Shown in pieces: positions 40,632 through 57,446 of a stretch of 64,000 nt of DNA. The notes beneath the pieces are model-generated. The model ran no database searches. It saw only the letters and a list, made by a program, of their open reading frames with translations, and had not been told where the DNA came from. Numbering within the stretch: position 1 is the stretch's first letter; each line of letters starts with the position of its first letter. Origin of the DNA: Schmidtea polychroa (lineage: Eukaryota); the NCBI GenBank assembly GCA_044892525.1, contig CM097887.1, forward strand, positions 49,166,001 through 49,230,000, in the 5' to 3' direction. The position numbers were made by a program, and so were the translations under genes.

Positions 40632-40791
40632 TCTTAATTTATATACACTTTTCAACTCTTATCTAAATTTAATTTTATTTTATGATTCCCGTTATTGTAT
40701 AATATTGATACCGCGCTTATATAACGATATAGTACTGTTATATACATAAGATATACTTACTTTTTACAATTATATACAGTCATATTCCTTT

Positions 40792-43700
40792 CTATATACG
40801 GGGTTTTGGAGGGCGCTGGGCGTTCCAGGCCTCCACCCACTGTTCTTGTTTGACATCACTTGGTCGTTTCACTCGATGTTGGAAATTTCTGATTCGGGTC
40901 ATCTCTAGTTCTCCGCGATGTCGTTTATCTTTAATTATTTTTATTGTTCCCCCCGTTATGATTAGGAATGCCCCTGTTATTATTATCCCACTGATCCACA
41001 TCATCTGCTTTACGCTTATACTCTCTGGTTTTTCCTTGTTTATTAATGTTGATATCGCTTCTGTACTTTTCTCGTTTCCTCTTTTGCCATTTCCTTTCAT
41101 CATCTCTCGTATTCTTGCTATTTCCTCGTTCATACCCTCCTTTGCCATCTTTTGTATTTTTTCCATCTCTTCCTCCGAAACATAGTTGTCCTGAGCTTCC
41201 TCGCCGGTTTTCTTGTGCTTTCCTCCTTCGTCTTTTTCGTCGTTGTTTTTTCTTTTCTTCCCTCTTTTCCCCGGGTATCGTCGACATTCCCTTTTTGATT
41301 CGTTCCTCCAGATACAAACTGTGTATTCCTTTGGGGGCTGCTGCTGCGTCACATATTGATGGCATCTCTCACCTGGTCCTAATCTTGAAATACAGACTTT
41401 GTGTTCTTTTCTTGGTTGAAGTGGCGTTATTACTACTTCACCTCCTTTTCCTAGGTGCACCTCTTTTCCCTTCACGTTCGTTATTCTTTTCCCGTCTCGA
41501 TTTCGGTATGCTTCTTGTATTCTTACCTCTGTTATTGGTTCTGTGTCCTCATTTATCAGTACTAATCTCTGATACGCTCTAGACATACATCTTCCTAGTA
41601 TGCACCTTTCCTTTAGGCCCCATTCTTCCTTTAAGTCCCACTGCTGTTCTTGTGCTTGCTTTTTCTTTTCTTGTTTTAGTTCTTCCTCTTTGCTATCTTG
41701 ATTCTCCGCTTCTTTGGTTTCTTTTATCGTTCTCGTCCCTCCATGAGCTGTTACTAACTCTATCAAGGTTAGCATGATTATCATTAAGATCATATTTGTT
41801 TCCATTTCTTTGTTAGTGAAAGGTAGGCATACCCTCTGTTTTCCATTATTCGGTTTTTCCTCCTCTTTGGTCTTGGTTCCCGGGCTGTTTCCCTCTCTTC
41901 TTGTACCCGAATCCTTGTTTTCCGGTTTATCCTCTTCCGGTTCTCTTTTCCCTTTATCCTCCTTTCGGCCTTTTCCGTCATTGTCATCGTGTTTATCTCC
42001 CCCGCTGTTGTTTAAAATGTCGTCCTCGACATTTATATCGTTCAGTAATCTGCGATATGCTGTTAACACTCTGTTCCTTGCTAACTTTGCTTCGAATTCA
42101 AACTCTTTTCTACCCGTTGCAGCATGTCTCTTTCTATTCCATTCTTTGACTAATTCTCTCAATTGAATACGACGATGTTTTCCAATTCGTTGTTGCTCGT
42201 TTTGATTTTGCGTGAATTTGAGGTCTTCTCTATTTAATACTATTAAGATAATTTTAGGCGTCCCCCCTTTAGTTAGGGTATTCTTTACCATCGCGTTTTC
42301 TCCGTTTTCGTAAAATTCGTTTATATTTATCGCATATTTATTATTTTGTGGTACTCTCCATGTCAATAATAATTTCATTGCTTCTAGATTTTTCCGTACC
42401 GTATTCCACTGAAATTGTGATGTGTTTTTGCATATATTTTCAACTTCCTCTTTTGTCGCATTTTTGCAAATAAATCTGATCATTTCCAAGTTTGGCTGTA
42501 TGGTTGCCCAGTCCAATGTGGAGTTCCCTTCGTTTGATTTTTCGTCTAGTCTCGATCCTGATTGATGTAGGATGTGGAGTGTTTTTGGGTGTATTTTCGT
42601 TATAGCTGCATACATCATGGCGGTTTCGCCTTGTTCATTTTTCGTGTTGGTTTCCTCGCCCATATCTCTAAGGATTCTCATGATCGTTATTGCTCTATTT
42701 TCTTTCGCTGCTAGTATTGCTTGTTGTAGTGGTGTTCTGGAATCCTTCGTTACCATCGTAAATGCTCGGGGCAAGAAGGTTTTAATTTTACCGATGTCCA
42801 AATTCGTTGTTTGATCTCTTGCATATGTATGCACGGTTTTTATTATTTCTGATAATATTATTTCATCTGGTAGCTCTAGCATTTCCTCAAAGAACACTTC
42901 TTTCGCTTTGCATATTATTGCTCTTTGATCTATATTCATTGATTTTGTTTCGATGAAGTTATTTGCGATTTTATGGTTCGTTTGCGCCATTGGTTCTCTT
43001 GATGTCTCATGCCTTATTTTCATTTTCTTTCCGGTTGGATTATTGATTCGTTCCTCTGCGGTAAGTATTTGAATAATATCTAGATAATTCTCGCGGATGT
43101 TGTTCATCGTGTCCATCATGTATAATACACTTACCGTTTCCCAATGTTTATTTCGTACCTGAGTGATGAATTGGAATATTGATTTTTCGAATGTGTCAAT
43201 TCGCTTTTTTAATAACTGCTCATCCTTATGATTTGTGAATGTTATTCCTCGTTCTAGTAATTGATTCGGGATTTCGAATAAATGATGTCCTCTCATAGCT
43301 TCTCTCATCAGTGTGTTTTCTCCTCTCGTGAATGCTTCGTTTACGTTGATCATATAATTATTTTTAATTGGGTTTCTCCAAGTGATTAATACTCCGGTAA
43401 TTGTTGTCAGTTTCTCTTTGATCGCTGTTAATAATCCCTCATACATGTTTCCGACTTCTCGATTGTCCTCGTATGATAGTAGCTCCATCAACGACGTAAA
43501 CGCTTCGGTACTTTTCCCTTCGATAGCATGATGTAGTGCGTTTTTCCGATCGTGGTCTTGTGTAGTTATTTTTGATCCTGTATCAAGTAATGCGGTTATT
43601 ATGTCTTTTGTTTTGCCTCTGTTTGCTGCTATCATTAATGGTGTGTAACCTTGGTTATTTTCTTGTTCTGTTGATCGCTTGCAGTCGTGAAATGCTTCTA

Positions 43701-44960
43701 TTGTTTCTAGTATTTGCTCATTGTTACCTACTTTCATGAGTTTGTGTAATGGTGTGTCTCCATAATGATCTGTTATTGTAAATAATATTGGCCATTGACT
43801 TTTAACTACTCGTAATAACGGATGTGTTCTCTCTCTGTTTGCATAGTTTTCGATCATCGTCAATAATCCTCCTAATATTTCGAAATCTAATCGATCTTTT
43901 GCCCATCCGGGTAATTTTATCTTTACCTCTCGTACGATTTTTTCAGCTTCCGATGGTTGTATGCCCAATCGTCCAGTGGTAGGTTCTGCGAGTTGTTGCA
44001 TCATGTTCATTCTGTAGGTTTGCGAACGTGTGGTTAATGTACGGCCTTCTGGTTGACTGGTGGCTGTTTTTGGAATTGATTTGCATCGTGCCACGTTTAC
44101 GTATATTGGCCTGGTGAATGGATTATTTACCAATTTCACTCTTACATTGGTTTCGCCTACGAACAAGATCTCATATGGCCCTTTTCCGTTCCATTGTAAC
44201 TTTCTTGTGGTTCCGGGAATTAATTCTGGGGTCTCGATCATCACCCAATCGCCTGTTCGAAACGTATGTTGCTTCACGTTTTTCTTTCGATCGTGTAAAT
44301 CTTTATAACTTTCCTGGTAGAACTTGATATTTAATCCCGCAGTTTCCCAAATCTCCTGCATTCTTTCTTTGAATTTCGTAACATAATCATCTATCTCCAT
44401 GTATTGCGATATCGGTGGTTGGTATTCCAGGTCCATTGGCATGTTGCATTCTCTTCCGTACATTAATTTAAATGGGCTCATTTTTGTTGATGCGTGAATC
44501 GACATTCCGTAAGCCATAAGACATAGATTTATGTATTCATCCCAATCTCGTTGGTGGCGATCGACGTAGTTTGATAACATTTGTATGAGTGTTCCATTAA
44601 ATCTTTCCGTCATCCCATTGGTTTGAGGGTGATATGGGGATGTTCTTAGTTTTGCGATTTTGAAATAGTTTGTTACTTCGCTCATTATCTCACTCATGAA
44701 ATTAGTTCCTTGATCAGTTAGTATTTGTTTCGGTGTTCCATAACGGCAACATATCTCTTCTACCAGTATCTTTGCAATTGTTTTGGCTTTTTGGTCTGGC
44801 ATCGCGAATGCTTCTGGGAATTTCGTGAGAAAGTCGGTAATCACTAAAATATAAACATTTCCTTTATCCGATTCTGGTAATGGACCAACTACATCCATTG
44901 ATATCATCGTCATCGGCTCTATTGGTACTGGCATTGGCGTTTCGATCCAGTGTTTTTCCT
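40792..44960 (-). CDS. Polyprotein C-terminal part: integrase core + GPY, two ankyrin clusters, internal signal peptide, small ectodomain, transmembrane anchor
   Basis: ISMDVVGPLP / ILTDQG / GMTERFNG (D-D35-E) and GKGPY. ANK motifs GDTPLH, GYTPLMIAA, RKNALHHA, SRTPLQ and GETAMMYAA. Hydrophobic MILMIIMLTLIELVTA (~41750-41800) and MWISGIIITGAFLIITGG (~40950-41005). Confidence 0.9.
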
Positions 44961-47900
44961 TGTTGCACAGGTTAGGCAGTTTTTCACCCATTCGGTTACG
45001 TCTTCCGTTAGGGTTGGCCAAAAATATTTCTGTTTCATTCTTGCTAACGTCTTTTTTGATGACATATGTCCTCCCAATCTCCCATCGTGATATTGCGTTA
45101 GTAACTCTTTTCGTCGGTTTTCCGGTATACACATTAATCGTTTTTCCCCATCCATTATCAGCAACCAATCTTTCTCCATAATATATCGGTGTCGGTGTTT
45201 ATCCATATGTTCTTTTAATTTTTGATCTTTCGCATATACCTCCGTCTTTCCGGTTTTTACATAATCGATAATTTGTTTTAATTCCGCGTCCTCTTGTTGG
45301 TCCTTTCGCAATTGACAGAAATCTAAATCTTCCGCTACTATTAAGCATATGCGTTGCATTTCTGGATCTACCAAATCTGGAAAAATAAACCTTGACATAC
45401 AGTCGGCGTTTGCATTCGCTCTTCCCGCTTTGAATTTTATGAACGGTGAATACTCTTGTAGCTGCATTGCCCATCTCATTAGTCTACTGGACGCTTCTTT
45501 ATGTTGCCCTAACCACACTAATGGTTGATGATCTGTGGTTATACATATCTCATGTCCCCATAGTAAATATCGGAAGTGTTTGATAGCTTGTATTATAGCC
45601 AATGCTTCTCGTTCTGTTACCGAATAGTTCTTCTCGTGCTTTTTGAATATTCGACTGTAATACCCGATTACTCTCTCTTTTCCTTCATCGTCTAATTGTC
45701 CCAGAATCGCGCCTGCCGCGTACCCGCTTGCATCCGTCGCCAATAGAAATGGCTTCTTGAAATCTGGGTGTACGAGGATAGGTGCTTCGATTAGCTTGTC
45801 TCTCAGCGTTTCAAACGCCTCTTGTTGTTCCTTTCCCCAAATGAACGAAATATCCTTCTTTACTAATTCCTGGATTGGTTTTGCAATTCCTGCATAATTT
45901 TTGATAAATTTGCGATAGTATCCGCATAATCCTAGAAATTCCTGAACTTGGGTGACAGTTTTCGGTGCTGGACATGTTTTTATTTTCTCAATGTTTCTTG
46001 GATCTGGCTCCTTTCCTTTAGCTGACACTATGTGTCCCAAAAACGTGACTTTTTCCTTTGCCCAATCACATTTTGAGGGTTTGAGCTTGAGTTTCCATTG
46101 TCTTAATCGAATAAATACATTTCGGATATCCTCCAGATGTTGTTCGAATGTCGCTGAATAGATTAACAAATCGTCAATATATACCATACATTGTTTGATT
46201 CCATGAGTGACGAAGTTCATACACCTTTGAAATGATGCTGGTGCGTTGGTCAGTCCGAATGGCATTTTTCTGAACTGATATAGATCTCGTCCCAACGTGA
46301 AAGCCGTTTTCTCTTTGTCCTCATCTTTGACTTTGATTTGCCAGTATCCACTTTTTAAATCTAAAGAAGTAAAATATGCTGCCCCTTGCAACATGAGTAA
46401 CATTTCATTGATGTCTGGCAATGGATAGGTATCTCTCTTGGTTACTGCGTTTAATTTTCGATAATCGATACAGAATCGTTGGGTGCCATCTTTCTTTTTT
46501 ACCATGACCACTGGGAATTGCCAAGGTGAGCAACTTGGTTCGATCACTTTTGCGTCTAACATTTTTTGTACTTCTGCTTCGGCTATTTCTTTTTGCATTT
46601 CTGCTAGCTTGTATGGTCTCAATGCAATTCGGGTTTCGTCTATGAGTGGTATTGCATGTAGGGTAACATCGCATGTACCCAAATCTAGGTCCGAGATGGC
46701 GAATATATCTTTATATTCTACTAATAATCGGTGCAATTTTTTCTTTTCATCATTCGTCAACAACATACTATCTATGGTCCATAATTCATCATCTTTGATC
46801 ATCTCGTTGGTCACTTTCGGTAATTCTATGTCCATCATTGGGGTCAATCTTCCCAATTTTTCATTCTCATAGATGATTTTGTCTTCCTCTTCAAAATTTG
46901 TGATGTTGATCGGTATCACTCCTTCTGGGTTTATTGTTATTATTTCTCTGGCGAGGGGTAACTCTCGTCGTTTTTCGAATGATTTGCTTGGTTCAAAGAT
47001 AACTTCTCCTTCCATCCCCGTATCCACCTTTATCTGACAAATCATCTGTGATTTTGCTGGTACCACAATTTTCTCTGGACATCTGATTATGGCATTCATT
47101 TTGCATATTCTGCCTGTTCTGTCTTTTAGGCACATGGTTGTTAAGTCAATTACCACTTCTTTTAATAATTCTGGCATCAAATCCGTTCCGATTATGCATG
47201 GTACGCTAAGTTTTGGTATTACTGCCAAATACGTTTCAATTTCGTTGTCCTGGTATCTCAATGTAGTCCACCATCTTCCGACCACATCTACTGTTTCTTT
47301 ACTACATGCTATGATATGAATGGTTGTTGATTCGATATCCTTCCAGTACTTACTGGGAATCTGATTGATTGCTATCGCTGATACGTTAGCTCCGGTGTCT
47401 ATCATAGCATTGGTTTCCTTACCATTGATTTGAATCATAACTGTGACTGCTGGACCTCCAGGTGAATTCATTGCTGCTATTGTTCTTACGTCATCTGCTT
47501 GATCTACACTTTTGGTACGTCGCGTTGGCATATAAAGCATCCCGGGTTGACTTGGTAATTGCGGATACATATTCTGTGTCATGGTCAAAGCGGCTTGTGG
47601 TCCCACGATATCCGGTGGTATATAGCTTCCGTTGGCGATCCAGGTGTTTGTCTTTTCCTTTTCCCAATACGGTGCTGTTTCCATCGGTTTTTCGTTTGGG
47701 TTTCTGTTTGGATATAGACATTTATCGTTCCCGTTATCGTCGTCGTCACTATCGCTGTTTGATGATTGACTTCTGAATCGGTCCAAAAATTTTGGTTTAT
47801 TCTTTTTCAATTGTCGTCTTGTTGCTTCGTCGTACATTACCTTCCGGAATCGTCTGCCTACTTCTTCGTCGGTTCCTTTAATCTTTGTTAATATTTTAAT

Positions 47901-50024
47901 TAATCGTTTTATTCGATGAATGTCTTTTGAGTGACCATGTAATACCATGGTTTTAGCTAAAAATGGTAGAAAGCCTACTATCATTTTCCAGTTAACTTTC
48001 TTTTCCCGCTTGTATATATCAAAACAAGCTAACATTTGTGTTAGTATTACTCTGACGATCTGAATTATGAGTATGATCCCCAATATTCCGGCCATCATTT
48101 GTCCGAAAACTAAGAATCTTCCCCACATTGCTTTCATCATATTTGAGGTTGCTTGTTGGAAATGGTCTGGCGATAATAGCAGTTCGTAATTCGGGCCTGA
48201 TTGATAATTTGTTCCCCCAGTTATTGTAACCATATTTGACAAAATGGATTCTCGTCTGGCTGGGAAGAGTACGTTAAGTCGTGATGTTTCTAGATCTTCT
48301 GGGGAATACATACCACCGTTTGACACGTCTATAGGTTTGAAATCCAGCTCTGTGGCGAGTTCTATTAATCCAAATTTCTTGGGCTCCTCGGATATGGTTT
48401 TTCCCGGTAACATCATCCATTTCCCATCGGGTCTTTCATACAATGGTCCGTACGCATTAGAACAGTTAAAGAGATTTGGATAGAAACCCACTGGATTCAT
48501 AATTCTAGTGACTGGTTGGACGAATCGATTTTGTCCTTTATAACGGATTTCTAATTCATTTGCACATCTCTTTTCGGGTAGTATGGATTTTTCGGGCATT
48601 CGTGCATACGTCTTGGTACACTGGTAGGTGTACATCACTTCTCCTACCATTCTACCAAAATGTCCGTCTGGTAATGGGAGTGATGGCATCGTGTTATCTG
48701 GGTGCGTTATCGCAATAGCTAGCTTTGTTTTCAGTATTTCTTTATTCAATGAACAATCGTTTTGTATGAGATCGTAATATACTTTCTGTAGGGTCGTTTG
48801 TCCACGATGAAATAAAAAATCCATTTTATTATTTGCATATAAGTATAGTTTTACGTCCTCCGTTGCTATCTTTCCCACTGCTCTATCGATTATTTGTCTT
48901 GACATATAGATACCAGCGTAATTGGTTTTATATACTATACTGTCGCATTTGGTGGTTTCTTTCTCTTTGATAAATCTCATACCTAGATCTGGATCGTCGG
49001 TAATTAATGCTGTTGGTGTTTTCTGCGTCGAGAGTCTTTTTTCTCTGGGAGATGGTGGCATTGGTTTTCCATTTCGCATTCTCACTCTTTCGTTTCCATC
49101 TTCGTCGTTTTCGTTCTCATAAATTTCTCCCTTTACTTCATTGAACAAAGCACTTTTTAACAGTTGGAGTCGGCATTTTTGCGTGTTAGCTTCATAGATT
49201 ATAGTTGATACTCCTGTCCTGCATACGTTTTCTGTAGCTCTACATGCTGGGTTGGTCTTCATTTGATAATTATTTGCGTCAAATTGTGCTTCGTATTCTT
49301 TTAATTCGACCGTATAAGACTCGATCACTACTACTCCCGATATTACCTCGCCTCGGATCGTATACGTACCTCCGTTACATGACCCATCTGATGACTTTAC
49401 TTTTCCGGATACGTAAACACTTTCGGTTTTAATCATTCCAGTTTGTCCGTGTATCGTCACTCCGTTATGCATTTTTAGAGCTCCGGTTCTAAATAGCTCT
49501 TTACAGTCTTCTCTTTGTATTTGTACGATTTCTTTATCTAGACCGGGTAGTATGAGGGTTGAATACGAATATTGTCCGCAATAATACGCGAGTACCTTTT
49601 TTGATACAACGCATTCTCTTGCTTGCGTTCTGATGAAATCTGATTCTTGATATACATGGTAGGTAACTTTTGTTTTTACTATGTCCAATCTGTTGGGTGA
49701 TGCTTGCCTGCATTCTTCTATATCTCTCAATGAGTATTTATCTCTCATTATCATATTATCACAATCGTAGATGGTAAAACCCGTTGCTCCACTTGTGCAC
49801 AACATCCATATCATCATAGTCATCATTAACGAATTTATCGATGCTTTTCGGCTTGCTGGGTCTTTCATGGGTAGTTCCCATTCTAGTTCATTTAACAGCT
49901 TTTTCAATCTAACTTGCATCGACCTTTCTTGCTCATTTTTTCGTGGCGCTTGTATAAGTCTTTTCCATCCTCCGGCACTGATAATATGGGGTTCAATAGT
50001 GTCTTCTATGATTGACACGGTCAT
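44919..50024 (-). CDS. Polyprotein: envelope glycoprotein (48020-49840) fused in frame to protease, RT, RNase H and the integrase zinc finger
   Basis: A single 1701-aa open frame. Signal-like LMMTMMIWMLCTSGATG, Cys-rich ectodomain and TM FLVFGQMMAGILGIILIIQIV, then MIDTGA (47399-47391), YIDD (46181-46170), ATDASG and H-x6-H...C-x2-C. A -1 shift near 44955 leads into the integrase core. Confidence 0.93.
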   Translation of the reverse strand: MTVSIIEDTIEPHIISAGGWKRLIQAPRKNEQERSMQVRLKKLLNELEWELPMKDPASRKASINSLMMTMMIWMLCTSGATGFTIYDCDNMIMRDKYSLRDIEECRQASPNRLDIVKTKVTYHVYQESDFIRTQARECVVSKKVLAYYCGQYSYSTLILPGLDKEIVQIQREDCKELFRTGALKMHNGVTIHGQTGMIKTESVYVSGKVKSSDGSCNGGTYTIRGEVISGVVVIESYTVELKEYEAQFDANNYQMKTNPACRATENVCRTGVSTIIYEANTQKCRLQLLKSALFNEVKGEIYENENDEDGNERVRMRNGKPMPPSPREKRLSTQKTPTALITDDPDLGMRFIKEKETTKCDSIVYKTNYAGIYMSRQIIDRAVGKIATEDVKLYLYANNKMDFLFHRGQTTLQKVYYDLIQNDCSLNKEILKTKLAIAITHPDNTMPSLPLPDGHFGRMVGEVMYTYQCTKTYARMPEKSILPEKRCANELEIRYKGQNRFVQPVTRIMNPVGFYPNLFNCSNAYGPLYERPDGKWMMLPGKTISEEPKKFGLIELATELDFKPIDVSNGGMYSPEDLETSRLNVLFPARRESILSNMVTITGGTNYQSGPNYELLLSPDHFQQATSNMMKAMWGRFLVFGQMMAGILGIILIIQIVRVILTQMLACFDIYKREKKVNWKMIVGFLPFLAKTMVLHGHSKDIHRIKRLIKILTKIKGTDEEVGRRFRKVMYDEATRRQLKKNKPKFLDRFRSQSSNSDSDDDDNGNDKCLYPNRNPNEKPMETAPYWEKEKTNTWIANGSYIPPDIVGPQAALTMTQNMYPQLPSQPGMLYMPTRRTKSVDQADDVRTIAAMNSPGGPAVTVMIQINGKETNAMIDTGANVSAIAINQIPSKYWKDIESTTIHIIACSKETVDVVGRWWTTLRYQDNEIETYLAVIPKLSVPCIIGTDLMPELLKEVVIDLTTMCLKDRTGRICKMNAIIRCPEKIVVPAKSQMICQIKVDTGMEGEVIFEPSKSFEKRRELPLAREIITINPEGVIPINITNFEEEDKIIYENEKLGRLTPMMDIELPKVTNEMIKDDELWTIDSMLLTNDEKKKLHRLLVEYKDIFAISDLDLGTCDVTLHAIPLIDETRIALRPYKLAEMQKEIAEAEVQKMLDAKVIEPSCSPWQFPVVMVKKKDGTQRFCIDYRKLNAVTKRDTYPLPDINEMLLMLQGAAYFTSLDLKSGYWQIKVKDEDKEKTAFTLGRDLYQFRKMPFGLTNAPASFQRCMNFVTHGIKQCMVYIDDLLIYSATFEQHLEDIRNVFIRLRQWKLKLKPSKCDWAKEKVTFLGHIVSAKGKEPDPRNIEKIKTCPAPKTVTQVQEFLGLCGYYRKFIKNYAGIAKPIQELVKKDISFIWGKEQQEAFETLRDKLIEAPILVHPDFKKPFLLATDASGYAAGAILGQLDDEGKERVIGYYSRIFKKHEKNYSVTEREALAIIQAIKHFRYLLWGHEICITTDHQPLVWLGQHKEASSRLMRWAMQLQEYSPFIKFKAGRANANADCMSRFIFPDLVDPEMQRICLIVAEDLDFCQLRKDQQEDAELKQIIDYVKTGKTEVYAKDQKLKEHMDKHRHRYIMEKDWLLIMDGEKRLMCIPENRRKELLTQYHDGRLGGHMSSKKTLARMKQKYFWPTLTEDVTEWVKNCLTCATRKNTGSKRQCQYQ

Positions 50025-50042
50025 TTCTACGTGATTTGCGAA

Positions 50043-53000
50043 CTATTTATTGGGTATTTTCCTTGCAGCTAATCCCATCAAATTATACATCAAATAAGTC
50101 ATTACCACTAGATGATGTTCGTCGTCATTTGCATTTGTCGTGAGCTGTTCAATCACTCTCTTGGTTTCATCCCAATCCGTTTTGGTAGTTTTCGTTTTTT
50201 CTTTGATTAGCTTTGGGATTATCCCCGATACGATGTGCCATAATTGTCTAGCTTCTACACTGGCTACTTTCCGTTGCCACAAGCGTCTAAGTTGTGGGTT
50301 TGTTATTATCAACATATCTTTTATCAATTCTCGTATCCATTTTTCTCCTCTTTCAATCGTTGGTTGGGCTTCCTTTAGTTCTCATACTATTTTGTCTAAC
50401 TTTTCCAATCGAACTTGCCCTTGTCCTTGTTTTACTTGTTCCTTGGTTTTGAACTCAGATTTCTCTCCTTGTTTCTTAGGTCTTCCTTTTGCCCGTTTTT
50501 CCATCATCGTTCCAGCTTCTCTGGTATTTTCGTAGTTCGGATTTCTTTCGTTATCCGTTCTGGGTAATGAGCTATCGTTATTTCTCAGCCACTCATTCCA
50601 TTCATCTATTATTTTATCAGTTTGACCTTCCGATGTTATTTTTGTTGGTTCTCTTTGCTTCTGGAATTGTTCATCCGTTTCGGTTTCCGTAGTATTGTCG
50701 ACGATTTCCTTGATGTTCAGTTTCGTTGGTTGTTGATAACTTGTTGATGGTTGGTTGTTGGTCCATATTTCGGCTCCGGTTGGCCATCTCACTAATAGCG
50801 GTGATCTTTCTCCTGGTTCCTCGTCACTATCTTCGAGGATAATCTCTTCGACTTCTTCAGTTTCATTAGATTTACTTGGTGCTTTGTTCGGACTCGGAGT
50901 ACTCAAACTACCTTTTGTTGGTTTATTGATTTTGCTTTTCCTTTTCAACGGTTTTCCCAACATTTCCGCCATTGTTAACACATTAGTCTCTTCTAGTCTC
51001 ATGGGTGTTATTCCGACGTCTGCATTATCGTCTAGTGATTTTCCTTGCAGTTGTAGATGGAATGGAGTTTCGTATGCTAATTTCTTTTTTAATTCCCTGA
51101 TTTTGGTGGTTGGGTGTACTTCTACTTCTTCAACATTCTTATCTGGGTATTTAATTCGGATTCGATATCTTTCTTGGGTATCTTGTGACCACTCGTGGTT
51201 TCGCCACTTCCCGATAATTTGTTCCAGTTGTTCAGGGTACCATTCGTTGTATTGCCGGTATTCTTCTATAGTTTTTACTATCTCTCTCAGACAATGGATA
51301 TTATCCGATATTTTTAAAATGAAGTTAGCCAATGCTATTACCTGTCGTTTTTGATTTTTCGCTCCCTTTATCAGGATGTCGCCTAATTGTTTATATCTTT
51401 CTCTCTCTTCTCGTTCTCTTGCTTCCGTCGCTTCCTCGCCGTCTATATCGGCATATTCTCGTTCCTTTTTCCGCATTGCATGAATATGTCTCGCCTCATT
51501 TTCGCTTTCTGACGTGACGTCCGTCTCGCTTTCGTCATCTGATGTCTGTCCCCTTGCTTCCTCTTCATATTCTGGAGGTTCCTCTTCTTCTTTCTCCGAT
51601 TCACTTTCTGTCTCACCAATGTCTGTTTCTACGAAGATTCCTTTCCGGATTTCCCATTCCTTATTTTCTATATTCCACACTCTTTCCCATGGGGTTCGTC
51701 TGCAGGATCTGGTACTTAGTTTCGTGATTTTTCCTTGTAGTTCCTTTTCTTTTAACCATTGTTGGTGAATTTCAATTATTTCTGTAGATTTTTGATATAA
51801 CGTTTTCATCCGGTCTCGTATTTCTTTTTGATATGTTACGTCTCTTGTTCGAAATTCATCCATTGGTACTATCCTGATTATTTGGTGATCGTCCCACATA
51901 CCCATTTCACTCAACGAGGTGTCGTCCTCCGCTCGTAATATTATTTTATCGTACATCATGACTACATCATTTACCATACCATCACTACTTTCGCTACGTA
52001 CCTTTTCCGTTATCTCTTGGTTTATCTTTGATACCAAATCATCCACTGTACTCTGATTGCTCATTTTTATTCGTCGTTTCTCTTCGTTCGGTAACCATAT
52101 GGTTATTTCCAACCTCTGCGGCTGGGTTTCTTTTAACCTTCCATATTTGTGAATCAAATTTATGGTTCTCCAATCACTCATTCGGAGCAATTCTGTATCT
52201 CGTAACCGGCTCATTAGTTCGTACATGGCTGGGGCTCGTCTGGTGATGAGTAAATCCCAGTTGTCTTCCACTTGTTCTTGAATTTGTTTGATCAGCTTGT
52301 CCAGGTTTCGTCTCAGAGTACATTTTTTTATTTGTTCTAATTTCAATTTGATATTAAAATCATATTCCGCCTTGGCATCTTTAGCCCAATCGTACAGGTT
52401 AGCTGGTTGTTTTTCTTTGTGCAACTTCAGTATTTGCGTTTCTCCTGGCCATATTAGTGCATCCACTAAGTGCATATCTTGTTTGACTTGCTCTCCTTGA
52501 TATTGGTATAGGTACTCCTTTTTCCTCGAGCTACCTAAGTGTTCCCGTATCCAATCGAAAAGTTCGTCGGTGACTGTGTTTTTAATCCATATTCTCTCAA
52601 GTCCTTTACTCGTTCCGATTTTTATTACATATCGAGTGGTATCGACCTGCTTCATTTTTTCCATATATTTTTTTATAATTGATTTTTCCTCGTTTGGTAT
52701 TAAATCTTTCTCGTTTCTTTCCAATTTCATCACTTTTTGCACGAATCGTCTGAATGGTATTATATCGATGAACTCTTGGTTCCTCACTACTACTGGGAGT
52801 ATTTCAGCTACTTGTCTTATCGCTTCCTCCCTCGCTTTTCTCAACTTTATTTCGATATCCTCGTCTTCACTTTCGCTGGTTATCTCGCTTTCGTCTTCTT
52901 CCTCTTCGATTTCCCCTTTTGGAGGTTCGCTTATTTCATTTAGCTGTAGTATTTCTCCACCCAAACTGCTCACATAGTCTTCGTCTGAGGACGACGTACC

Positions 53001-53888
53001 TTTTGTCCTTTTCATCATGTTGATTCGCAAATTTCTCATCCTAGGTACTCTCTTTAGTTTTCTATTTTCGAATATCGTTGTTTCTTCTGATTCCGATTCT
53101 TGTAGCATTTGGGGGTTTAACTGACTGATTTGCTCCTTGTTTTGGTTGTTTCCCTCTTTTATTCTTATTTCCGTTTCTTCATGTTTCTTTTCTATTTTAT
53201 CTTTTATCTTTTTCCAGAATATTTTCTGAATTCTCTGGTTCCCTTTCAAGATCGTGGTTGAATTCTCTGTTTTCATTTTCGTTGTCGTTTCTTTTAACTT
53301 TTCTGGTTCAGTCATGGGTACTACCCCTGGGTTTTTCCCGTAATTGTAGCAGTACTGGCTTTTCATGTCTTTTACTAATTTCATCATATTTATTCGCAAT
53401 GGTTGTTCTTGTCGTTGTTGGTTGCGTTCTTGTTTTATCCTCTCTTCCTCGGCCTGTAGTCTTTGCCATTCTTGTACATGTTGATGTACTTCATAACTGT
53501 TGAGATTTTCGGTACTCCTCATCATACGTATATTCTGGGTTTGTTGTGGTGCTGGTTCTTGTCTTGGTCTCATCATTTGTTGCATCATCTGTTTCATTTG
53601 GGAAATTTCCTGCATAACGTTCATTTGTTTTCCTTCACTAGGGTTACTTTGTCGTTGCGGATTCGACATGTAATTAGTATTTCGTTGTGGTGGTCGTTGT
53701 GGTTGACCCCTTTCTCGGCAATCTCTGGAGATGTGACCTGGCTGACAACAGTTAAAACAACCTCTCAACTGGCATCTATTTTCCGTATGTCCGCGCCGTC
53801 CGCAACGATTACAATTTGCGTTTCTATAACAATCTCTGTCCCAGTGTCCTGGTCTACCACATGTTCGGCACTGCTTGTTATCGTTCAT
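50043..53888 (-). CDS. Gag C-terminal part: three CCHC knuckles, Q-rich and acidic linkers, three ubiquitin-like domains; in-frame TGA at 50382-50384
   Basis: CRTCGRPGHWDRDC, CNRCGRRGHTENRC and CFNCCQPGHISRDC. The track ORFs starting at 53888, 50327 and 50024 are all in the same frame. Confidence 0.85.
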
Positions 53889-54940
53889 ATTTCGTTATTG
53901 AAATTGTTCTCATTATTCAGGTTGTTACGATTACCATTATTCCCATTTGATCGTCCTTGTGGTGGTTTGAAGATTTGATGCGCTCCTGGTATAAATTGAT
54001 TCATTTTCGGTTCCTGATTGTTGTTATCTCCGTTATCCGCTTTCGCTATTGCTGTCGCTATCCTCCCATCCTCTTGCATAATATTCATTTGAGCTGGAAG
54101 GTGGAGCTCGCATCTTGTAGCCCAGTCTATGGCTTCCTCTAACGTTTTGCACATTTGACAACCTACTGAGGCTCTTACCTCCTCTCGGCGTAATCCCTCT
54201 ATGAAATAGCCGATCAGATTTTCCTCGGGTAATTTCCCATTCATTGCTTTCTTCGCTAATCTTCGTAATTCACTGGCATATAATGTTATCGATTCGTTCG
54301 CTCTTTGTTTCCTATTTGCTAGTTCGCCCAACGCCTGGTTGATTGGCTTACTGGCTCCGAAGGTTTTCTTCAAGAATGTTTTGATATCTTCCCACTTCTC
54401 TAATTTCGTATCTCTCTCTTTAGCTTCTAAATATACTTCTAATGCGCTATCGCACAAAAACAACGGCATCCTTTTGCTAATTGCTTCGGGTGTCCATCCA
54501 CACACAGTGATATAAACTTCAAAATTAGTTATAAACGTTGCTAACTTGTTTGCATTTCCATTGAACGGTTCTCCTCTGAACTTCTCTTTATACTCGTCGG
54601 TTTTTACGACATTCGTCATGATTGGTGTTCTAGATTCGTCTGTTTCTTTTAAATTGTCTAACGATGTGACTAAACTCTGGGCTGATAATTCTTCGGTTGA
54701 CGTTGCTAAACTATTAGTGATGTCGGACAAACTTTCTCTGCTTCGAGATCGACTAGGGGTGTATCCGAGATTTTCTTGGTCAAATATGGGTACTTGATTG
54801 GTTCTTCTTGCTCCTTGTGATATTCCTCTTTGATGTTTAATAGATCGTCCTCTTTTGAGTTGTTGTAGTTCGTCTCCTGAAAATAATACGTCTCCTGGCT
54901 TACTTGAAGATCTAAGATTTGGTTTATCCGTGATTCTTTC
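53885..54940 (-). CDS. gag: Gag capsid domain (no ATG start in this copy)
   Basis: FNGN...FITNFE...W...LFLCDSALEVY...WEDIKTFLKKTF...RKQRANESITLYASELRRLAKKA...FIEGLR...TLEEAI is a retrotransposon capsid pattern. The frame is open from 54940. Confidence 0.85.
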   Translation of the reverse strand, partial: ERITDKPNLRSSSKPGDVLFSGDELQQLKRGRSIKHQRGISQGARRTNQVPIFDQENLGYTPSRSRSRESLSDITNSLATSTEELSAQSLVTSLDNLKETDESRTPIMTNVVKTDEYKEKFRGEPFNGNANKLATFITNFEVYITVCGWTPEAISKRMPLFLCDSALEVYLEAKERDTKLEKWEDIKTFLKKTFGASKPINQALGELANRKQRANESITLYASELRRLAKKAMNGKLPEENLIGYFIEGLRREEVRASVGCQMCKTLEEAIDWATRCELHLPAQMNIMQEDGRIATAIAKADNGDNNNQEPKMNQFIPGAHQIFKPPQGRSNGNNGNRNNLNNENNFNNEI

Positions 54941-55982
54941 CTACGCTTCCTTGTAATTAGCGGCTACCGACTTGGGTGGATTGGTTTCTGGTGAAGTTTC
55001 CTTCGTAAATTATTCGGTATGAGTCTGCTACTGCGATTCTGAGGAGATTTACTAGTCCTTGACAGATGGCTGCTAATACTATGAGGCTGAATATATCGGT
55101 GATTTGTTCGAAGTTGGAGATGTCGCTCTCTGTATCTTCTTCCGTTCTGGAGTCTTCCGGTTGCTGGGTTTCTTGGTGCGGGTTCTGAATGGATTTATTC
55201 TTGGTCGATTGTTGATTTCTTCGAATTTCTTTTGTGCAGGTTCTGGGTTGGCTTGATTGGCTGGCTTGATTTGATATCTAAAATGAAAAAATGATCTCGT
55301 GTTTCATCTGCTTACACGACTTCATCATTCTTTCTGCAACATTCAAACACAGACACCTTTTAGGTTTCTGTTTGTGTTTCCCCCATCTTTTGTGAAATCC
55401 TTTCCGCGGGTTATAATTTCCCATCAGCCCGTATTTTTCGTCGATTTTAAATTATCTATATGCGGTAGTAACAATTATCTATAGAGTCGTAATAATTATC
55501 TATTCGCTATCAATTATAATATAAATAGGTCGTTGTCGGTCTCTACTTATTACCCCCCTTCGTTTTCCTAATCCCTTTGCGCCATGTCGCTATTTTACTT
55601 TTCGTATTTACTATTATTCCACTCGGTTCTACTCTGGAACCAATAAAATATATTTTCCCGCTTCACCCAAAAAAATTATTCCGTAGAGTTTCTCTATTTC
55701 ACTGGGATCCCTTTAATTAGTTAGTTACTTTCCTCTTCTACTCGTTATCATCATTTCACCTATTCTTTATTTTCCATTATCTTTTAATTCATTTCCTTCT
55801 TCCCCTTCCTTTTCCATTATAATCTTATTATCTTTTCCACGAGCTCGTTTATTTCCTCTCTAAACTCAAATTTTCGTAATTACATTCAATTTGTTTCTAG
55901 CTAGCTTTAGTATTCCATTTCACTATTAATCTAAATATTATCTCATTGTAGCTTAACTGCTATCTATCGCTTTTCTAGGCCT

Positions 55983-56278
55983 TTACGACTGGCTGGCACT
56001 ATTCAACAGCTCAATCTTCTTCCTTCTGATCGGTTGGACTATTCGACAACTCGATCTTACGACTGGCTGGCACTATTCAACAGCTCAATCTTCCTCCTTC
56101 TGATCGGTTGGACTATTCAACAACTCGATCTTACGACTGGCTGGCACTATTCAACAGCTCAATCTTCCTCCTTCTGATCGGTTGGACTATTCAACAACTC
56201 GATCTTACGACTGGCTGGCACTATTCAACAGCTCAATCTTCCTCCTTCTGATCGGTTGGACTATTCAACAACTCGATC
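55983..56278. repeat. Four near-identical 74-bp tandem repeats in the 5' leader of the giant element
   Basis: Units start at 55983, 56057, 56131 and 56205. Each is a dimer of ~37-bp half units (ggcactattcaacagctcaatctt / ggactattcaacaactcgatctt). Confidence 0.95.
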
Positions 56279-56433
56279 TTAATATTCCCCACTCTGCATG
56301 CTGCTACTTCTCTTTTCCTCTTTTACCCCGAATTATCATTTTCTCTGTCTCTACTTTTAATTTGTCGACTTGATCTTTACCGCTTGAGAGTGTTTCCCCT
56401 TTCCCCCCTTGCTCAAAACGCACGACGATCGCG

Positions 56434-56616
56434 ATTCTATTGTCCTATTTTAATTGTTCTTATTTTTATATTTTTTGTTTTAATTCTTATTTTCTAATTT
56501 ATTATTTTCCTTATATCCTATTCTATTTTATTCTTAAATTTGTTTTTGTTTTATTTTTATTTTAATTTAATTATATTTCACCTAATTTCTTGGATACCCT
56601 TCGATTCAGCCCAACA
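56434..56616 (-). repeat. Start of the 5' LTR (183-bp block)
   Basis: Identical to 35576-35758. The sequence switches abruptly to unrelated GC-richer DNA at 56433. Confidence 0.85.
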
Positions 56617-57446
56617 ATACTAATATATTTGGGTCAGAATCATGTTTTGCCCAACAATAGCTAAGCTGCAAATTAACATTATCATACCAATTGTTATTAT
56701 AAATATATAAATTATGTCAGTACATTGCATGATTTTTCGCGGGTTAAGTCTAATTATCATATATTTAATAAATATATTATGCTCTCCCCCATTTCTGTAC
56801 TCGAGTTCTAGATTGCTGTGGACTCAATTCCTATTCATATCTCATTTTATAAATATTAAATCATAACAAACTCTTTCATTTTAATTTGGTTTTAAGAAAT
56901 AATGACATTTAATGTCCATCGCAACAATTTGATCATTGTGGGGTAATGACTGTCACGCTATTTCAGTTTGAATGGCTACCATGATGTTGCCGAGTTGCTA
57001 GCCTTATATTCATGAAAGGGATGAAATCTGGATATGGAGCGAAAATTTTAGAAAAATTGTTGTTAGATTATCAGATTCAAATTTGTTATTTTGAGACTGT
57101 TTCCCATCGTTTCAGCCACCTTTAACCACCTTGTTAATTAGATAAGTTGATGTGTTTGATTAATTGTGAATTTAATAATATAAATTTTGTTTTATAATTT
57201 TAGAACAAAAAAACACCGATATCTTTACTGATTCATAGTCACAAATTTCTAATAAATACAATGTCAATTGAAAATAAGCCACAGGTGAAAATTGAAAAAA
57301 GTTCTTATAATATATATAGTGCAAATCCCAATAGTAGGTTTACGGATGTACTTGTAAACAGTTTCTGTGTATGATGGTGTCTCCAGGGGCGAATATGATT
57401 TTTCATACGCCATGTTTACAAGTTTACAAATTTTCTGTGACCAAGC

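What the first reader, a model, noticed from the sequence alone, without database searches (positions are those of the whole stretch)
48020..50024. Chuvirus/class III-like fusion glycoprotein placed between gag and protease, in frame with Pol
Seen: an uninterrupted frame runs leader, signal-like segment, ~570-aa Cys-rich ectodomain with a furin site REKR (49046-49035), TM helix, cytosolic linker, then DTG protease. The motifs TIYDC...SLRDIEEC, YYCGQYS, SDGSCNG, NNKMDF, GEVMYTYQC, PVTRIM, GGMYSPEDL and LFPARR line up, from memory, with Chuviridae-type glycoproteins. Established: such glycoproteins have been captured by BEL/Pao retrotransposons, and env normally lies 3' of pol as a separate ORF. 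Inference: signal peptidase would release Env into the ER while PR-RT-IN stays cytosolic and membrane-tethered until autoproteolysis. That is a flavi/alphavirus-like polyprotein topology, new for an LTR element.
Basis: partly seen in the sequence, partly recalled or inferred. Interest (0 to 1): 0.93.

Follow-up and report, generated by a model that had tools for sequence, protein, structure and literature searches.

The report
Giant gypsy element, envelope inside polyprotein

Summary
ORF 50024..44919 (minus strand, 1701 codons) reads: leader, signal-like segment, 553-aa ectodomain, one TM helix, linker, protease, RT, RNase H, integrase zinc domain.

The ectodomain is a class III fusogen. It hits Pfam PF24664 at E 4.5e-70. 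Its AlphaFold model (pLDDT 85.7) matches chu-related virus glycoproteins (E 1e-38) and herpesvirus gB (E 1e-13).

The host element is Ty3/gypsy, not BEL/Pao. It spans 35576-56617, is 21,042 bp long and has identical 184-nt LTRs. It also carries ankyrin, RING and TRAF-MATH cargo.

Ten relatives from four metagenome assemblies and one NCBI record, all in clusters distinct from the window's protein, keep Env and protease in one ORF. One (P0017) has Gag, Env and Pol in a single 2146-aa ORF. So the fusion is a family trait.

The novelty claim fails. Arkhipova and Yushenova (2019) reported in-frame env between gag and pol in planarian Burro elements. Chary and Hayashi (2026) reported GAG-ENV-POL gypsy elements in three phyla.

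The REKR motif is unique to this copy. This copy also has frame changes and two in-frame stops.

The membrane topology model is plausible and fits the conserved layout, but it is untested.

The parts
35576..56617 (-). Whole LTR element, 21,042 bp, a giant Ty3/gypsy-type (Burro-like) provirus-like element
   Evidence: Bounded by 184-nt direct repeats that are 100% identical and 20,858 nt apart. GC is about 0.39 and A-rich coding-strand skew runs continuously from 36-56 kb, against about 0.30 GC in the flanks.
56434..56617 (-). 5' LTR (184 nt)
   Evidence: No clear target-site duplication and no TGG-type primer-binding site were recognised.
35576..35759 (-). 3' LTR (184 nt)
55909..56352 (-). Array of 74-nt tandem repeats in the long 5' leader
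   Evidence: family D3. The relative L001 also has tandem arrays upstream of gag. Burro elements are drawn with tandem repeats.
53709..54730 (-). gag: capsid ORF (54730..53885) plus three CCHC zinc knuckles that open ORF2. One frame change separates capsid and nucleocapsid in this copy.
   Evidence: Retrotrans_gag E 1e-11 and Ty3_capsid. Three CCHC knuckles are visible in the ORF2 translation. The relative L005 has capsid and knuckle in one ORF.
50382..53888 (-). ORF2, 1168 aa: three zinc knuckles, then about 1100 aa of charged sequence of unknown function
   Evidence: zf-CCHC only at normal thresholds. Sub-threshold ubiquitin-like hints: PF00240 E 0.006 and PI3K_rbd E 0.003. No homology to relatives. 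The single-sequence AlphaFold model is unusable, pLDDT 35.8.
50025..50381 (-). Spacer between ORF2 and ORF3, in the same frame as both. It looks coding but is interrupted.
   Evidence: There are 2 stops (counting the ORF2 terminator) in 120 codons of the shared frame, against 18 and 8 in the other frames. Homology to the pre-Env leader of P0004 extends upstream of the ORF3 ATG (E 5e-7).
44919..50024 (-). ORF3, 1701 aa: leader, Env, TM, linker, PR, RT, RNase H, IN zinc domain, without interruption
49779..49829 (-). Signal-like hydrophobic segment (aa 66-82), preceded by a 65-aa leader (49830-50024)
   Evidence: 11-aa Kyte-Doolittle score 2.05 just before the ectodomain. An equivalent segment is present in all 11 relatives that could be scored, including those where it lies 130-1344 aa into the ORF.
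48120..49778 (-). Env ectodomain (aa 83-635), a class III, chuvirus-like fusion glycoprotein
   Evidence: PF24664 E 4.5e-70. AlphaFold2 pLDDT 85.7. Chu-related virus glycoproteins E 1.6e-38, TM-score up to 0.62. The top 50 PDB matches are all herpesvirus gB, E 1.8e-13. 13 of 14 Cys lie in conserved columns.
49035..49046 (-). REKR motif (aa 327-330) in a low-confidence surface loop
   Evidence: Found only in this sequence among 56 aligned.
48021..48119 (-). Transmembrane helix (aa 636-668)
   Evidence: 19-aa Kyte-Doolittle score 2.53. A TM-like segment directly after the ectodomain is seen in the 11 relatives whose sequence continues past it.
47460..48020 (-). Linker from TM to protease (aa 669-855). 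It is poorly conserved and contains YPQL at aa 820-823 (47556-47567).
   Evidence: No BLAST similarity to relatives. A Tyr-Pro dipeptide lies 20-100 aa upstream of the first D[TS]G in 9 of 11 proteins (mean shuffle probability 0.24, binomial about 1e-4; a post hoc test).
47145..47459 (-). Retropepsin (aa 856-960), active site D-T-G-A
   Evidence: RVP E 1.9e-10
45450..46502 (-). Reverse transcriptase (46026-46502) and RNase H (45450-45839)
   Evidence: RVT_1 E 6e-36 and RT_RNaseH E 1.7e-38. The best solved-structure match is Ty3 RT 4ol8, E 3.4e-89.
44056..45128 (-). Integrase (H2C2 zinc domain, catalytic core and following part), broken once by a frameshift in this copy
   Evidence: Integrase_H2C2 lies in ORF3 and rve in ORF4. 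Relatives have both in one ORF.
40792..45168 (-). ORF4, 1458 aa: integrase core, then ankyrin repeats (about 42472-43722) and an unknown C-terminal part
   Evidence: rve E 4.8e-13 and Ank_2 E 1.1e-17
38798..40186 (-). Cargo in the 3' part of the element: RING-finger ORF (39632..40186) and TRAF-type MATH ORF (38798..39340), in the same frame but separated by non-coding sequence
   Evidence: zf-C3HC4 E 3.8e-5 and TRAF-mep_MATH E 1.4e-27. There are 71 stops in that frame across the 5-kb 3' region, so these are islands and not one ORF.

Best explanation
**What it is (shown).** This is a young copy of a giant Ty3/gypsy-type endogenous retrovirus-like element. It is the same kind of element as the planarian Burro elements.

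Its envelope gene is a chuvirus-like class III (gB-fold) fusion glycoprotein. That gene is not a separate 3' ORF. It is a module inside the Gag-Pol coding frame, upstream of the protease.

**How it most likely works (inferred).**
1. The ribosome translates the leader, and the hydrophobic segment before the ectodomain targets the nascent chain to the ER.
2. The ectodomain is threaded into the lumen, and the single TM helix stops transfer.
3. PR-RT-RNase H-IN is then made in the cytosol as a very long cytoplasmic tail of a type I membrane protein.
4. The retropepsin frees Pol from the Env tail. A recurrent Tyr-Pro site 30-90 residues upstream of the active site is the candidate N-terminal cut.
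5. Host signal peptidase may separate Env from whatever is upstream.

In relatives where Gag is in the same ORF, the one polyprotein would be divided by a luminal host protease and a cytosolic viral protease. That division of labour resembles flavivirus polyproteins.

**This copy.** It is probably not autonomous as it stands. Besides the capsid/nucleocapsid frame change, it has two in-frame stops ahead of the Env leader and one frameshift in the integrase.

**Confidence.** About 0.9 for the identity statement and about 0.5 for the mechanism; the single figure given is a compromise.
For: **Identity of Env.**
- PF24664 E 4.5e-70.
- AlphaFold2 model with pLDDT 85.7.
- The best viral structural matches are chu-related virus glycoproteins, E 1.6e-38, TM-score up to 0.62.
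- The top 50 PDB matches are all herpesvirus gB, E about 1e-13, probability 1.0.
- All conserved cysteines are retained.

**Carrier.**
- Identical 184-nt LTRs.
- Retrotrans_gag/Ty3_capsid, three CCHC knuckles, and the order PR-RT-RH-IN.
- The RT is closest to Ty3 (E 3.4e-89).

**The fusion is a conserved trait.**
- Env and at least one protease lie in one ORF in P0001, P0003, P0004, P0005, P0006, P0012, P0013, P0014, P0017 and P0153, at 25-36% identity to the window where measured. They come from four ENA assemblies and one NCBI record.
- P0017 holds Gag capsid, Env, PR, RT, RH and IN in one 2146-aa ORF.
- P0010, P0013 and P0018 hold Gag and Env in one ORF. P0005 holds a zinc knuckle, Env and PR in one ORF.

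**Topology elements.** Every relative that could be scored has a hydrophobic segment just before the ectodomain. Every one whose sequence continues past the ectodomain has a TM-like segment just after it. Where a D[TS]G follows, the first lies 107-214 aa after the TM.

**Candidate processing site.** Tyr-Pro upstream of the protease in 9 of 11 proteins.

**Spacer.** The ORF2-ORF3 spacer looks coding in the shared frame and is homologous to a relative's leader.

**Literature.** The same layout and cargo (three CCHC knuckles, RING, MATH_TRAF, ankyrin, tandem repeats, in-frame env with hits to mononegavirus fusion glycoproteins) are described for Burro (PMC6431247).
Against: - No transcript, ribosome or protein data exist for this locus. 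Translation through the TM-PR junction is inferred only from the absence of stops.
- A 1:1 Env:Pol ratio (and 1:1:1 with Gag in single-ORF relatives) is unusual for retroelements.
- The signal-like segment of the window copy is the weakest of the set (Kyte-Doolittle 2.05) and is not N-terminal.
- Signal-peptidase cleavage could not be predicted with a dedicated tool.
- The Tyr-Pro motif was noticed post hoc. It could equally be a YPxL budding motif or nothing.
- REKR is not conserved.
- This copy has frame changes and in-frame stops. I could not tell real mutations from assembly errors.
- No sibling copies from the same genome were reachable.
- The Burro-type domains BCL2-like, BIR and dUTPase-like were not detected, and the LTRs are short. 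This may therefore be a separate family.
- The host was not identified.
Confidence: 0.6

Rival explanations
1. Env and Pol are made from different spliced mRNAs. A subgenomic mRNA starts Env at an internal Met (for example the one 13 residues before the hydrophobic segment, which would give a canonical N-terminal signal peptide). A second splice removes env so that Gag-Pol is made in the usual way. Under this reading the in-frame continuity has no role in translation.
For: Met53 followed by a basic stretch and the hydrophobic segment would make a textbook signal peptide. Retroviruses express env from spliced mRNA (established knowledge). The host is a eukaryote with introns. Two in-frame stops separate ORF2 from ORF3 in this copy.
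Against: A separately expressed Env needs a stop after its cytoplasmic tail. None is present here or in ten relatives in other protein clusters. If env were an intron of the pol mRNA, nothing would keep it in frame with both flanks, yet P0017 keeps Gag, Env and Pol in one frame. The linker is poorly conserved but never interrupted.
Confidence: 0.2
2. The fusion is a relic in a dead copy. The element is a decaying insertion, and its long ORFs merely have not yet been hit. Nothing is expressed from it, so the layout carries no mechanism.
For: This copy has one frame change between capsid and nucleocapsid, two in-frame stops before the Env leader and one frameshift in the integrase. Its 3' 5 kb is a patchwork of short ORFs. 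No target-site duplication or primer-binding site was recognised.
Against: The LTRs are 100% identical. ORFs of 1168, 1701 and 1458 codons are intact in DNA whose other frames have 4-10 stops per 100 codons. All conserved Env cysteines and the PR/RT motifs are kept. The layout recurs in intact form in relatives. Death of this copy would not change the family-level reading.
Confidence: 0.15
3. The region is an assembly chimera, or a chuvirus-derived endogenous viral fragment that landed inside a gypsy element by chance.
For: Chuvirus glycoprotein fragments are common in invertebrate genomes (PMC7642597 and PMC10084718, listed).
Against: The frame is continuous on both sides. The same order recurs in ten relatives from five sources. 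Base composition does not change across the junctions.
Confidence: 0.02

Closest known systems
Burro / GYPSM1 giant gypsy-like LTR retrotransposons of planarians (Grohme et al. 2018; Jurka 2007; analysed in Arkhipova and Yushenova 2019, PMC6431247)
   Same: Both are giant Ty3/gypsy elements over 20 kb long. Both have Gag with retrotrans_gag plus three CCHC knuckles and tandem repeats. Both carry RING, MATH_TRAF and ankyrin cargo. Both have env in frame between gag and protease, with similarity to mononegavirus fusion glycoproteins. The paper states this is the first such case. The window's AT-rich flanks (about 30% GC) fit a planarian host, but that is only a resemblance.
   Different: LTRs here are 184 nt and the whole element is 21 kb, against more than 30 kb with long LTRs for Burro. 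RING and MATH lie downstream of the integrase, not upstream of Env. BCL2-like, BIR and dUTPase-like motifs were not detected. The coding region here is split into four ORFs, where Burro has one 4,873-aa ORF1. No Burro sequence was available to compare, so membership rests on architecture alone.
GAG-ENV-POL Ty3/gypsy 'errantiviruses' with HSV/gB-type ENV in Nematoda, Bryozoa and Platyhelminthes (Chary and Hayashi 2026, PMC13524379), and the nematode ERVs of Sacco et al. 2022 (J Gen Virol 103:001739; not readable here)
   Same: Ty3/gypsy pol, a class III gB-type Env, the order gag-env-pol, and an ectodomain flanked by a signal peptide or a TM segment and by a TM segment.
   Different: The readable text treats ENV and POL as separate ORFs. 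It does not discuss frame, polyprotein or topology: the terms 'fused', 'polyprotein' and 'frameshift' each have 0 occurrences. That search was limited to regions of 10 kb or less. Whether Sacco et al. discuss an in-frame fusion could not be checked.
Anakin-type mosquito BEL/Pao elements with a captured Chuviridae glycoprotein (Dezordi et al. 2020, PMC7642597)
   Same: A chuvirus-like glycoprotein carried by an LTR retroelement.
   Different: A different superfamily: the RT here is closest to Ty3 and gag is Ty3-type. Env here is upstream of pol and in frame with it. The usual place for env, as the finding notes, is a separate ORF 3' of pol.
Flavivirus, pestivirus and alphavirus structural polyproteins (an analogy of mechanism only; own knowledge)
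   Same: Membrane glycoproteins are embedded in a longer polyprotein. They are delimited by internal signal and stop-transfer segments. Host signal peptidase works on the luminal side and a viral protease on the cytosolic side.
   Different: There is no sequence or fold relation to those polyproteins. No cleavage has been shown here. The fusogen class differs: class III here, class II there.
Foamy virus Env leader peptide and Gag-independent Pol (an analogy only; own knowledge)
   Same: A long cytosolic leader precedes the Env membrane segment. In this copy Pol is not fused to capsid.
   Different: Foamy virus Pol comes from its own spliced mRNA and is not fused to Env. No similarity was tested or found.

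Membership tests
Ty3/gypsy (Metaviridae) LTR retroelement | Long terminal direct repeats bounding the element | tested here: met
   184-nt repeats, 100% identical, 20,858 nt apart
Ty3/gypsy (Metaviridae) LTR retroelement | Gag with a Ty3-type capsid and CCHC nucleocapsid | tested here: met
   Retrotrans_gag E 1e-11, Ty3_capsid E 4.7e-6 and zf-CCHC. Three knuckles are visible. Capsid and knuckles are in different frames in this copy.
Ty3/gypsy (Metaviridae) LTR retroelement | Pol order PR-RT-RNase H-IN, with RT closest to Ty3/gypsy | tested here: met
   Domain order. Best solved structures are Ty3 RT 4ol8 (E 3.4e-89) and Ty3 Gag-Pol 7q5b.
Ty3/gypsy (Metaviridae) LTR retroelement | Target-site duplication, tRNA primer-binding site, polypurine tract | tested here: inconclusive
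   No matching flanks and no TGG-type site next to the 5' LTR were recognised
Class III viral fusion glycoprotein (Pfam PF24664, chuvirus-like G; gB fold) | Profile match above the curated threshold | tested here: met
   236.8 bits against a cut-off of 27, E 4.5e-70
Class III viral fusion glycoprotein (Pfam PF24664, chuvirus-like G; gB fold) | Fold shared with solved class III fusogens | tested here: met
   Model pLDDT 85.7. The top 50 PDB hits are all herpesvirus gB, E 1.8e-13, probability 1.0, about 630-680 aligned columns, TM-score about 0.37. Chu-related virus G: E 1.6e-38, TM-score up to 0.62. No PDB hit by sequence alone.
Class III viral fusion glycoprotein (Pfam PF24664, chuvirus-like G; gB fold) | Type I layout: signal sequence, ectodomain with conserved disulfide cysteines, single C-terminal TM | tested here: met
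   The signal-like segment follows a 65-aa leader.
Class III viral fusion glycoprotein (Pfam PF24664, chuvirus-like G; gB fold) | Trimer with internal fusion loops; membrane-fusion activity | not testable with these tools
   Only a monomer model was made, and no activity data exist
Burro-like giant planarian gypsy elements | Element over 20 kb, Gag plus three CCHC knuckles, env in frame between gag and protease | tested here: met
   compared with the description in PMC6431247
Burro-like giant planarian gypsy elements | Cargo domains: ankyrin, RING, MATH_TRAF | tested here: met
   Ank_2 E 1.1e-17; zf-C3HC4 E 3.8e-5 and TRAF-mep_MATH E 1.4e-27. RING and MATH lie after the integrase, a position different from the one described for Burro1.
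Burro-like giant planarian gypsy elements | BCL2-like, BIR, Ubi2/SUMO-like and dUTPase-like motifs | tested here: not met
   None reached E 0.01. There were only sub-threshold ubiquitin-like hints. A profile of the PR-RT spacer matches foamy virus and caulimovirus PR-RT sequences and not dUTPase. The published motifs came from HHpred, which is more sensitive than these searches.
Burro-like giant planarian gypsy elements | Sequence relatedness to Burro1-4; planarian host | not testable with these tools
   No Burro sequence and no host identification were available
GAG-ENV-POL gypsy 'errantiviruses' (Chary and Hayashi 2026) | Ty3/gypsy pol, gB-type ENV, order gag-env-pol | tested here: met
   compared
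BEL/Pao elements with chuvirus glycoprotein (Anakin type) | BEL/Pao-type protease, RT and gag | tested here: not met
   All Pfam hits are Ty3/gypsy or retroviral types and none is BEL/Pao-specific. The RT is closest to Ty3.
Flavi/alphavirus-like polyprotein topology (works like; not membership) | Internal signal and stop-transfer segments bracketing the glycoprotein inside a longer ORF | tested here: met
   Seen in 11 relatives, with the signal-like segment 130-1344 aa into the ORF. One ORF holds Gag, Env and Pol in P0017.
Flavi/alphavirus-like polyprotein topology (works like; not membership) | Actual cleavage by signal peptidase and by the element's protease | not testable with these tools
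   There is only a candidate Tyr-Pro site

The most novel reading that the evidence does not exclude
In a widespread clade of giant gypsy-type elements, the fusogen is an obligatory internal module of the Gag-Pol polyprotein. The replication enzymes are synthesised as the cytoplasmic tail of a class III glycoprotein, so they are membrane-anchored at the site of assembly. They are then released at a conserved Tyr-Pro site. Pol would thus be recruited through Env and not, or not only, through Gag. The clade reaches well beyond planarians, given relatives in four unrelated metagenome assemblies.
Probability: 0.4. Interest if true: 0.7.

Novelty: new member of a known kind. Interest (0 to 1): 0.4.

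Why it matters
The gene order and the in-frame position of env are already published, so this is not a discovery of a new kind.

It still matters as a clean, young example of a layout whose mechanism nobody has worked out. The open question is how a type I membrane fusogen is produced from the middle of a retroelement polyprotein, and how Pol then reaches the particle.

This work adds three things.
- A confident structural assignment of this Env to the chuvirus/gB class III fold.
- Evidence that the Env-protease fusion, the flanking hydrophobic segments and a Tyr-Pro motif are kept in ten relatives in other protein clusters, including one single-ORF Gag-Env-Pol.
- The observation that such elements are common in metagenome assemblies, and that at least one is mislabelled as bacterial.

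With these, the question can be tested using transcript, ribosome-profiling and proteomic data from planarians or related hosts.

Tried and rejected
- **PDB by sequence.** A search with Env gave no hit. Only the fold search worked.
- **Word-based protein search.** It found only two relatives. The exhaustive representative search was needed.
- **Sibling copies.** None from the same genome could be reached, so I made no copy census and no dN/dS estimate.
- **Host.** Rfam and tRNA scans of the window found nothing. The host was not identified.
- **ORF2.** There was no homology to relatives. The single-sequence AlphaFold model was unusable, pLDDT 35.8, so I ran no fold search on it.
- **Furin site.** Rejected as a family feature: 1 of 56 sequences.
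- **Late-domain motifs in the linker.** PTAP and PPxY are at chance level. Only YPxL / Tyr-Pro stands out.
- **dUTPase between PR and RT.** Not found.
- **3' region.** A single long decayed ORF in the 3' 5 kb is rejected, because there are 71 stops in the RING/MATH frame.
- **Sacco et al. 2022.** Not held in the library.
- **BEL/Pao assignment.** Rejected.
- **LTR ends.** Target-site duplication and primer-binding site were not recognised.

- The script printed alignment bounds in two frames that bracket the integrase frame change.

Full report
**1. What is in the sequence**

On the minus strand an ATG-to-stop ORF runs from 50024 to 44919, 1701 codons with no internal stop. The other two frames of the same DNA have 4-10 stops per 100 codons, so the ORF is not a chance feature.

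Pfam places six domains along it:
- a viral fusion glycoprotein (PF24664 Monjiviricetes_fusion, E 4.5e-70);
- a retroviral aspartyl protease (aa 862-953);
- reverse transcriptase (aa 1175-1333);
- RNase H (aa 1396-1525);
- the integrase zinc domain (aa 1633-1691).

A hydropathy scan finds one strong helix at aa 636-668 and a weaker hydrophobic segment at aa 66-82. It also finds 14 cysteines and a single N-glycosylation sequon in the 553-aa ectodomain, and REKR at aa 327-330, which is nt 49046-49035.

**2. The element around it**

Two 184-nt direct repeats, 100% identical, lie at 35576-35759 and 56434-56617. They bound a 21,042-bp unit whose GC content and strand skew differ from the flanks.

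Reading 5' to 3' on the minus strand, the element contains:
- a 1.7-kb leader with a 74-nt tandem array;
- a capsid ORF 54730..53885 (Retrotrans_gag, Ty3_capsid);
- ORF2 53888..50382, with three CCHC knuckles followed by about 1100 aa of unknown sequence;
- ORF3, the subject of the finding;
- ORF4 45168..40792, with the integrase core followed by ankyrin repeats;
- a 5-kb 3' part with islands of coding sequence, including a RING finger and a TRAF-type MATH domain.

The RT-RNase H region is closest to Ty3 among solved structures (E 3.4e-89). The element is a Ty3/gypsy type, not BEL/Pao.

**3. Interruptions in this copy (counts only)**

- Capsid and nucleocapsid are in different frames: one frame change.
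- ORF2 and ORF3 share a frame but are separated by two in-frame stops, one of which is the ORF2 terminator.
- The integrase is split by one frameshift. Relatives have it in one ORF.

The 120-codon spacer between ORF2 and ORF3 has 2 stops in the shared frame, against 18 and 8 in the other frames. The leader of relative P0004 aligns to it upstream of the ORF3 ATG (E 5e-7). The spacer therefore looks like coding sequence that is, or recently was, continuous with Env.

I cannot tell real mutations from assembly errors, or from programmed recoding.

**4. What the glycoprotein is**

A sequence search of PDB found nothing.

I built a 56-sequence alignment of relatives. All invariant and nearly invariant cysteines are present in the window protein. 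The alignment gave an AlphaFold2 model with mean pLDDT 85.7.

Foldseek results were as follows.
- Against predicted viral structures, chu-related virus glycoproteins come first (E 1.6e-38 to 1e-35, TM-score up to 0.62). They include Tacheng tick virus 4 and Wenling crustacean virus 14. Other mononegavirus glycoproteins and herpesvirus gB follow.
- Against PDB, the top 50 matches are all herpesvirus gB (E 1.8e-13 and weaker, probability 1.0, about 630-680 aligned columns).

The protein is a class III, chuvirus-like fusogen.

REKR lies in a low-confidence loop of the model. It is present in only 1 of the 56 aligned sequences, so furin processing is not a family feature.

**5. Is the fusion an accident of this copy?**

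No. An exhaustive search of 1.84 billion cluster representatives, using Env plus linker plus protease as the query, gave 1042 hits. The best are long polyproteins.

Pfam and local domain mapping show Env followed by one to four protease domains in the same ORF in ten relatives. In many the ORF continues with RT, RNase H and integrase. The ten are P0001, P0003, P0004, P0005, P0006, P0012, P0013, P0014, P0017 and P0153.

- P0017 contains Gag capsid, Env, protease, RT, RNase H and integrase in one 2146-aa ORF.
- P0010, P0013 and P0018 have Gag and Env in one ORF.
- P0005 has a zinc knuckle, Env and proteases in one ORF.

These proteins come from four different ENA assemblies and one NCBI record. 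The loci translate to the proteins as called.

In every relative that could be scored, a hydrophobic segment lies just before the ectodomain, even when that point is 130-1344 residues into the ORF. Where the sequence continues, a TM-like segment lies just after the ectodomain. Where a D[TS]G follows, the first lies 107-214 residues beyond the TM.

Relative L005 is bounded by LTRs of about 650 nt, 98% identical and 20.15 kb apart. It carries other cargo, an RNase_T exonuclease and prolyl-hydroxylase fragments. Giant size and a cargo-rich 3' part are therefore family traits.

**6. How it most likely works**

*Shown:* the domain order, the absence of stops, the conserved hydrophobic brackets and the fold.

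*Inferred:*
1. The segment before the ectodomain acts as a signal or signal-anchor.
2. The ectodomain enters the ER lumen, and the TM helix stops transfer. A basic stretch follows it, as expected for a cytosolic flank.
3. Protease-RT-RNase H-integrase stays cytosolic, as the tail of a type I membrane protein, until the protease cuts it off.

A Tyr-Pro dipeptide in the context hydrophobic-Y-P-x-L/A lies 20-100 residues upstream of the first protease active site in 9 of 11 proteins. The mean shuffle probability is 0.24 and the binomial tail about 1e-4. Retroviral proteases are known to cut Tyr/Phe-Pro bonds (established knowledge). This is therefore a candidate site for the release of Pol. A YPxL budding motif is the alternative reading. 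The test was post hoc and should be treated as a lead.

I give about 0.9 to the identity statement and about 0.5 to the translation-through and membrane-tether mechanism.

**7. Rivals**

- *Separate spliced mRNAs for Env and for Gag-Pol.* These would explain the internal Met that makes a canonical signal peptide. They would not explain why no relative has a stop after the Env tail, nor why env stays in frame with both neighbours.
- *A dead relic.* This fits the interruptions of this copy. It does not fit the identical LTRs, the three very long ORFs or the intact relatives.
- *A chimera or chance insertion.* This is excluded by recurrence.

**8. Comparison with what is known**

Arkhipova and Yushenova (2019, PMC6431247) analysed the giant Burro/GYPSM1 gypsy elements of *Schmidtea mediterranea*. 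They reported:
- Gag with three CCHC knuckles;
- RING, MATH_TRAF_C, ankyrin and other apoptosis or ubiquitin-related motifs;
- tandem repeats;
- an env region between BCL2-like and protease, with hits to fusion glycoproteins of arthropod and fish mononegaviruses.

Chary and Hayashi (2026, PMC13524379) report GAG-ENV-POL gypsy elements with gB-type Env in Nematoda, Bryozoa and Platyhelminthes. They cite Sacco et al. 2022 for nematodes. Their readable text does not discuss frame or topology.

The window element shares the Burro hallmarks. It differs in four ways:
- its LTRs are short and its total length smaller;
- RING and MATH lie after the integrase;
- BCL2-like, BIR and dUTPase-like motifs are undetected;
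- its coding region is split.

I file it as a new member of a known kind. Direct sequence comparison with Burro and identification of the host were not possible with these tools.

**9. Verdict**

Identity, position and frame are right. The topology is plausible. The novelty claim, the BEL/Pao context and the furin site are not supported.
- Interest is moderate. The mechanism of an envelope protein embedded in a Gag-Pol polyprotein is still open, and this locus plus its relatives make it testable with descriptive data.

**10. Slips**

- The script output shows alignment bounds that bracket the integrase frame change. They are not repeated here.

Noticed in passing
window 8388-12950 (minus strand): A second, ordinary-sized Ty3/gypsy element with 236-nt LTRs at 99% identity. 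Its ORFs 8618..9979, 10059..11660 and 11669..12643 match the RT, RNase H, integrase and zinc knuckle of the giant element at 27-35% identity. It has no Env.
   Followed up: partly
window 7862-8158 and 26511-26808: Another pair of direct repeats of about 300 nt, 86-93% identical and 18.65 kb apart, flanking the small gypsy element and much else. They could be the old LTRs of another large element or a segmental duplication.
   Followed up: no
window 38798-40186 (minus strand): A RING-finger ORF and a TRAF-type MATH ORF lie inside the LTR-bounded element, in one frame but separated by non-coding sequence. This looks like a captured TRAF-like gene, either in pieces or with introns.
   Followed up: partly
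window 42472-43722 (minus strand): Ankyrin repeats are fused downstream of the integrase in ORF4. In relative L001 ankyrin repeats sit between Env-protease and the next protease, so the cargo is shared but its position is not.
   Followed up: partly
P0001, P0003, P0004, P0005, P0013 (loci L001-L004): These relatives carry two to four tandem retropepsin domains in one polyprotein. The window element has one.
   Followed up: partly
L001 6669-23731: The six successive called ORFs of this relative each step by +1 in reading frame (0,1,2,0,1,2). That pattern is unlikely for random decay and remains unexplained.
   Followed up: no
P0006 (NCBI HBK71150.1): A 2627-aa Env-PR-RT-RH-IN polyprotein of this family is deposited as a hypothetical protein of a Flavobacteriaceae metagenome-assembled genome. 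It is almost certainly a mis-binned eukaryotic contig.
   Followed up: no
L002 9547-11622; L005 16542-17882 and 20304-21005: Relatives carry an RNase_T-type exonuclease ORF after pol. L005 also has prolyl 4-hydroxylase N-terminal fragments inside its LTRs.
   Followed up: no
window 56380-56433 (minus strand): Directly after the 5' LTR there is no TGG-type primer-binding site, but a purine-rich run lies about 25 nt in. No target-site duplication was seen at the element ends.
   Followed up: partly
window 51000-52100 (ORF2 aa about 586-632 and 910-957): There are sub-threshold matches to ubiquitin-fold families (PI3K_rbd E 0.003, ubiquitin E 0.006). They recall the Ubi2/SUMO-like motif reported in Burro.
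   Followed up: partly
window 2970-4025 (+), 5702-6391 (-), 16592-17176 (+), 57836-58399 (+): Host-type coding pieces: a proteasomal AAA ATPase, a WD40 protein, an RTP1 C-terminal domain and a BED zinc finger. They show the window is eukaryotic nuclear DNA.
   Followed up: no
window 17193-17713; 62252-62574; 61481-61784: Tandem arrays with periods of 48 nt, 9-12 nt and 22 nt. The 9-12-nt array abuts the N run at 62139-62268.
   Followed up: no
window 30000-34000: A block with GC 0.40 containing an ORF of 268 aa (32295..33101, minus strand) with no Pfam match. Its nature is unknown.
   Followed up: no
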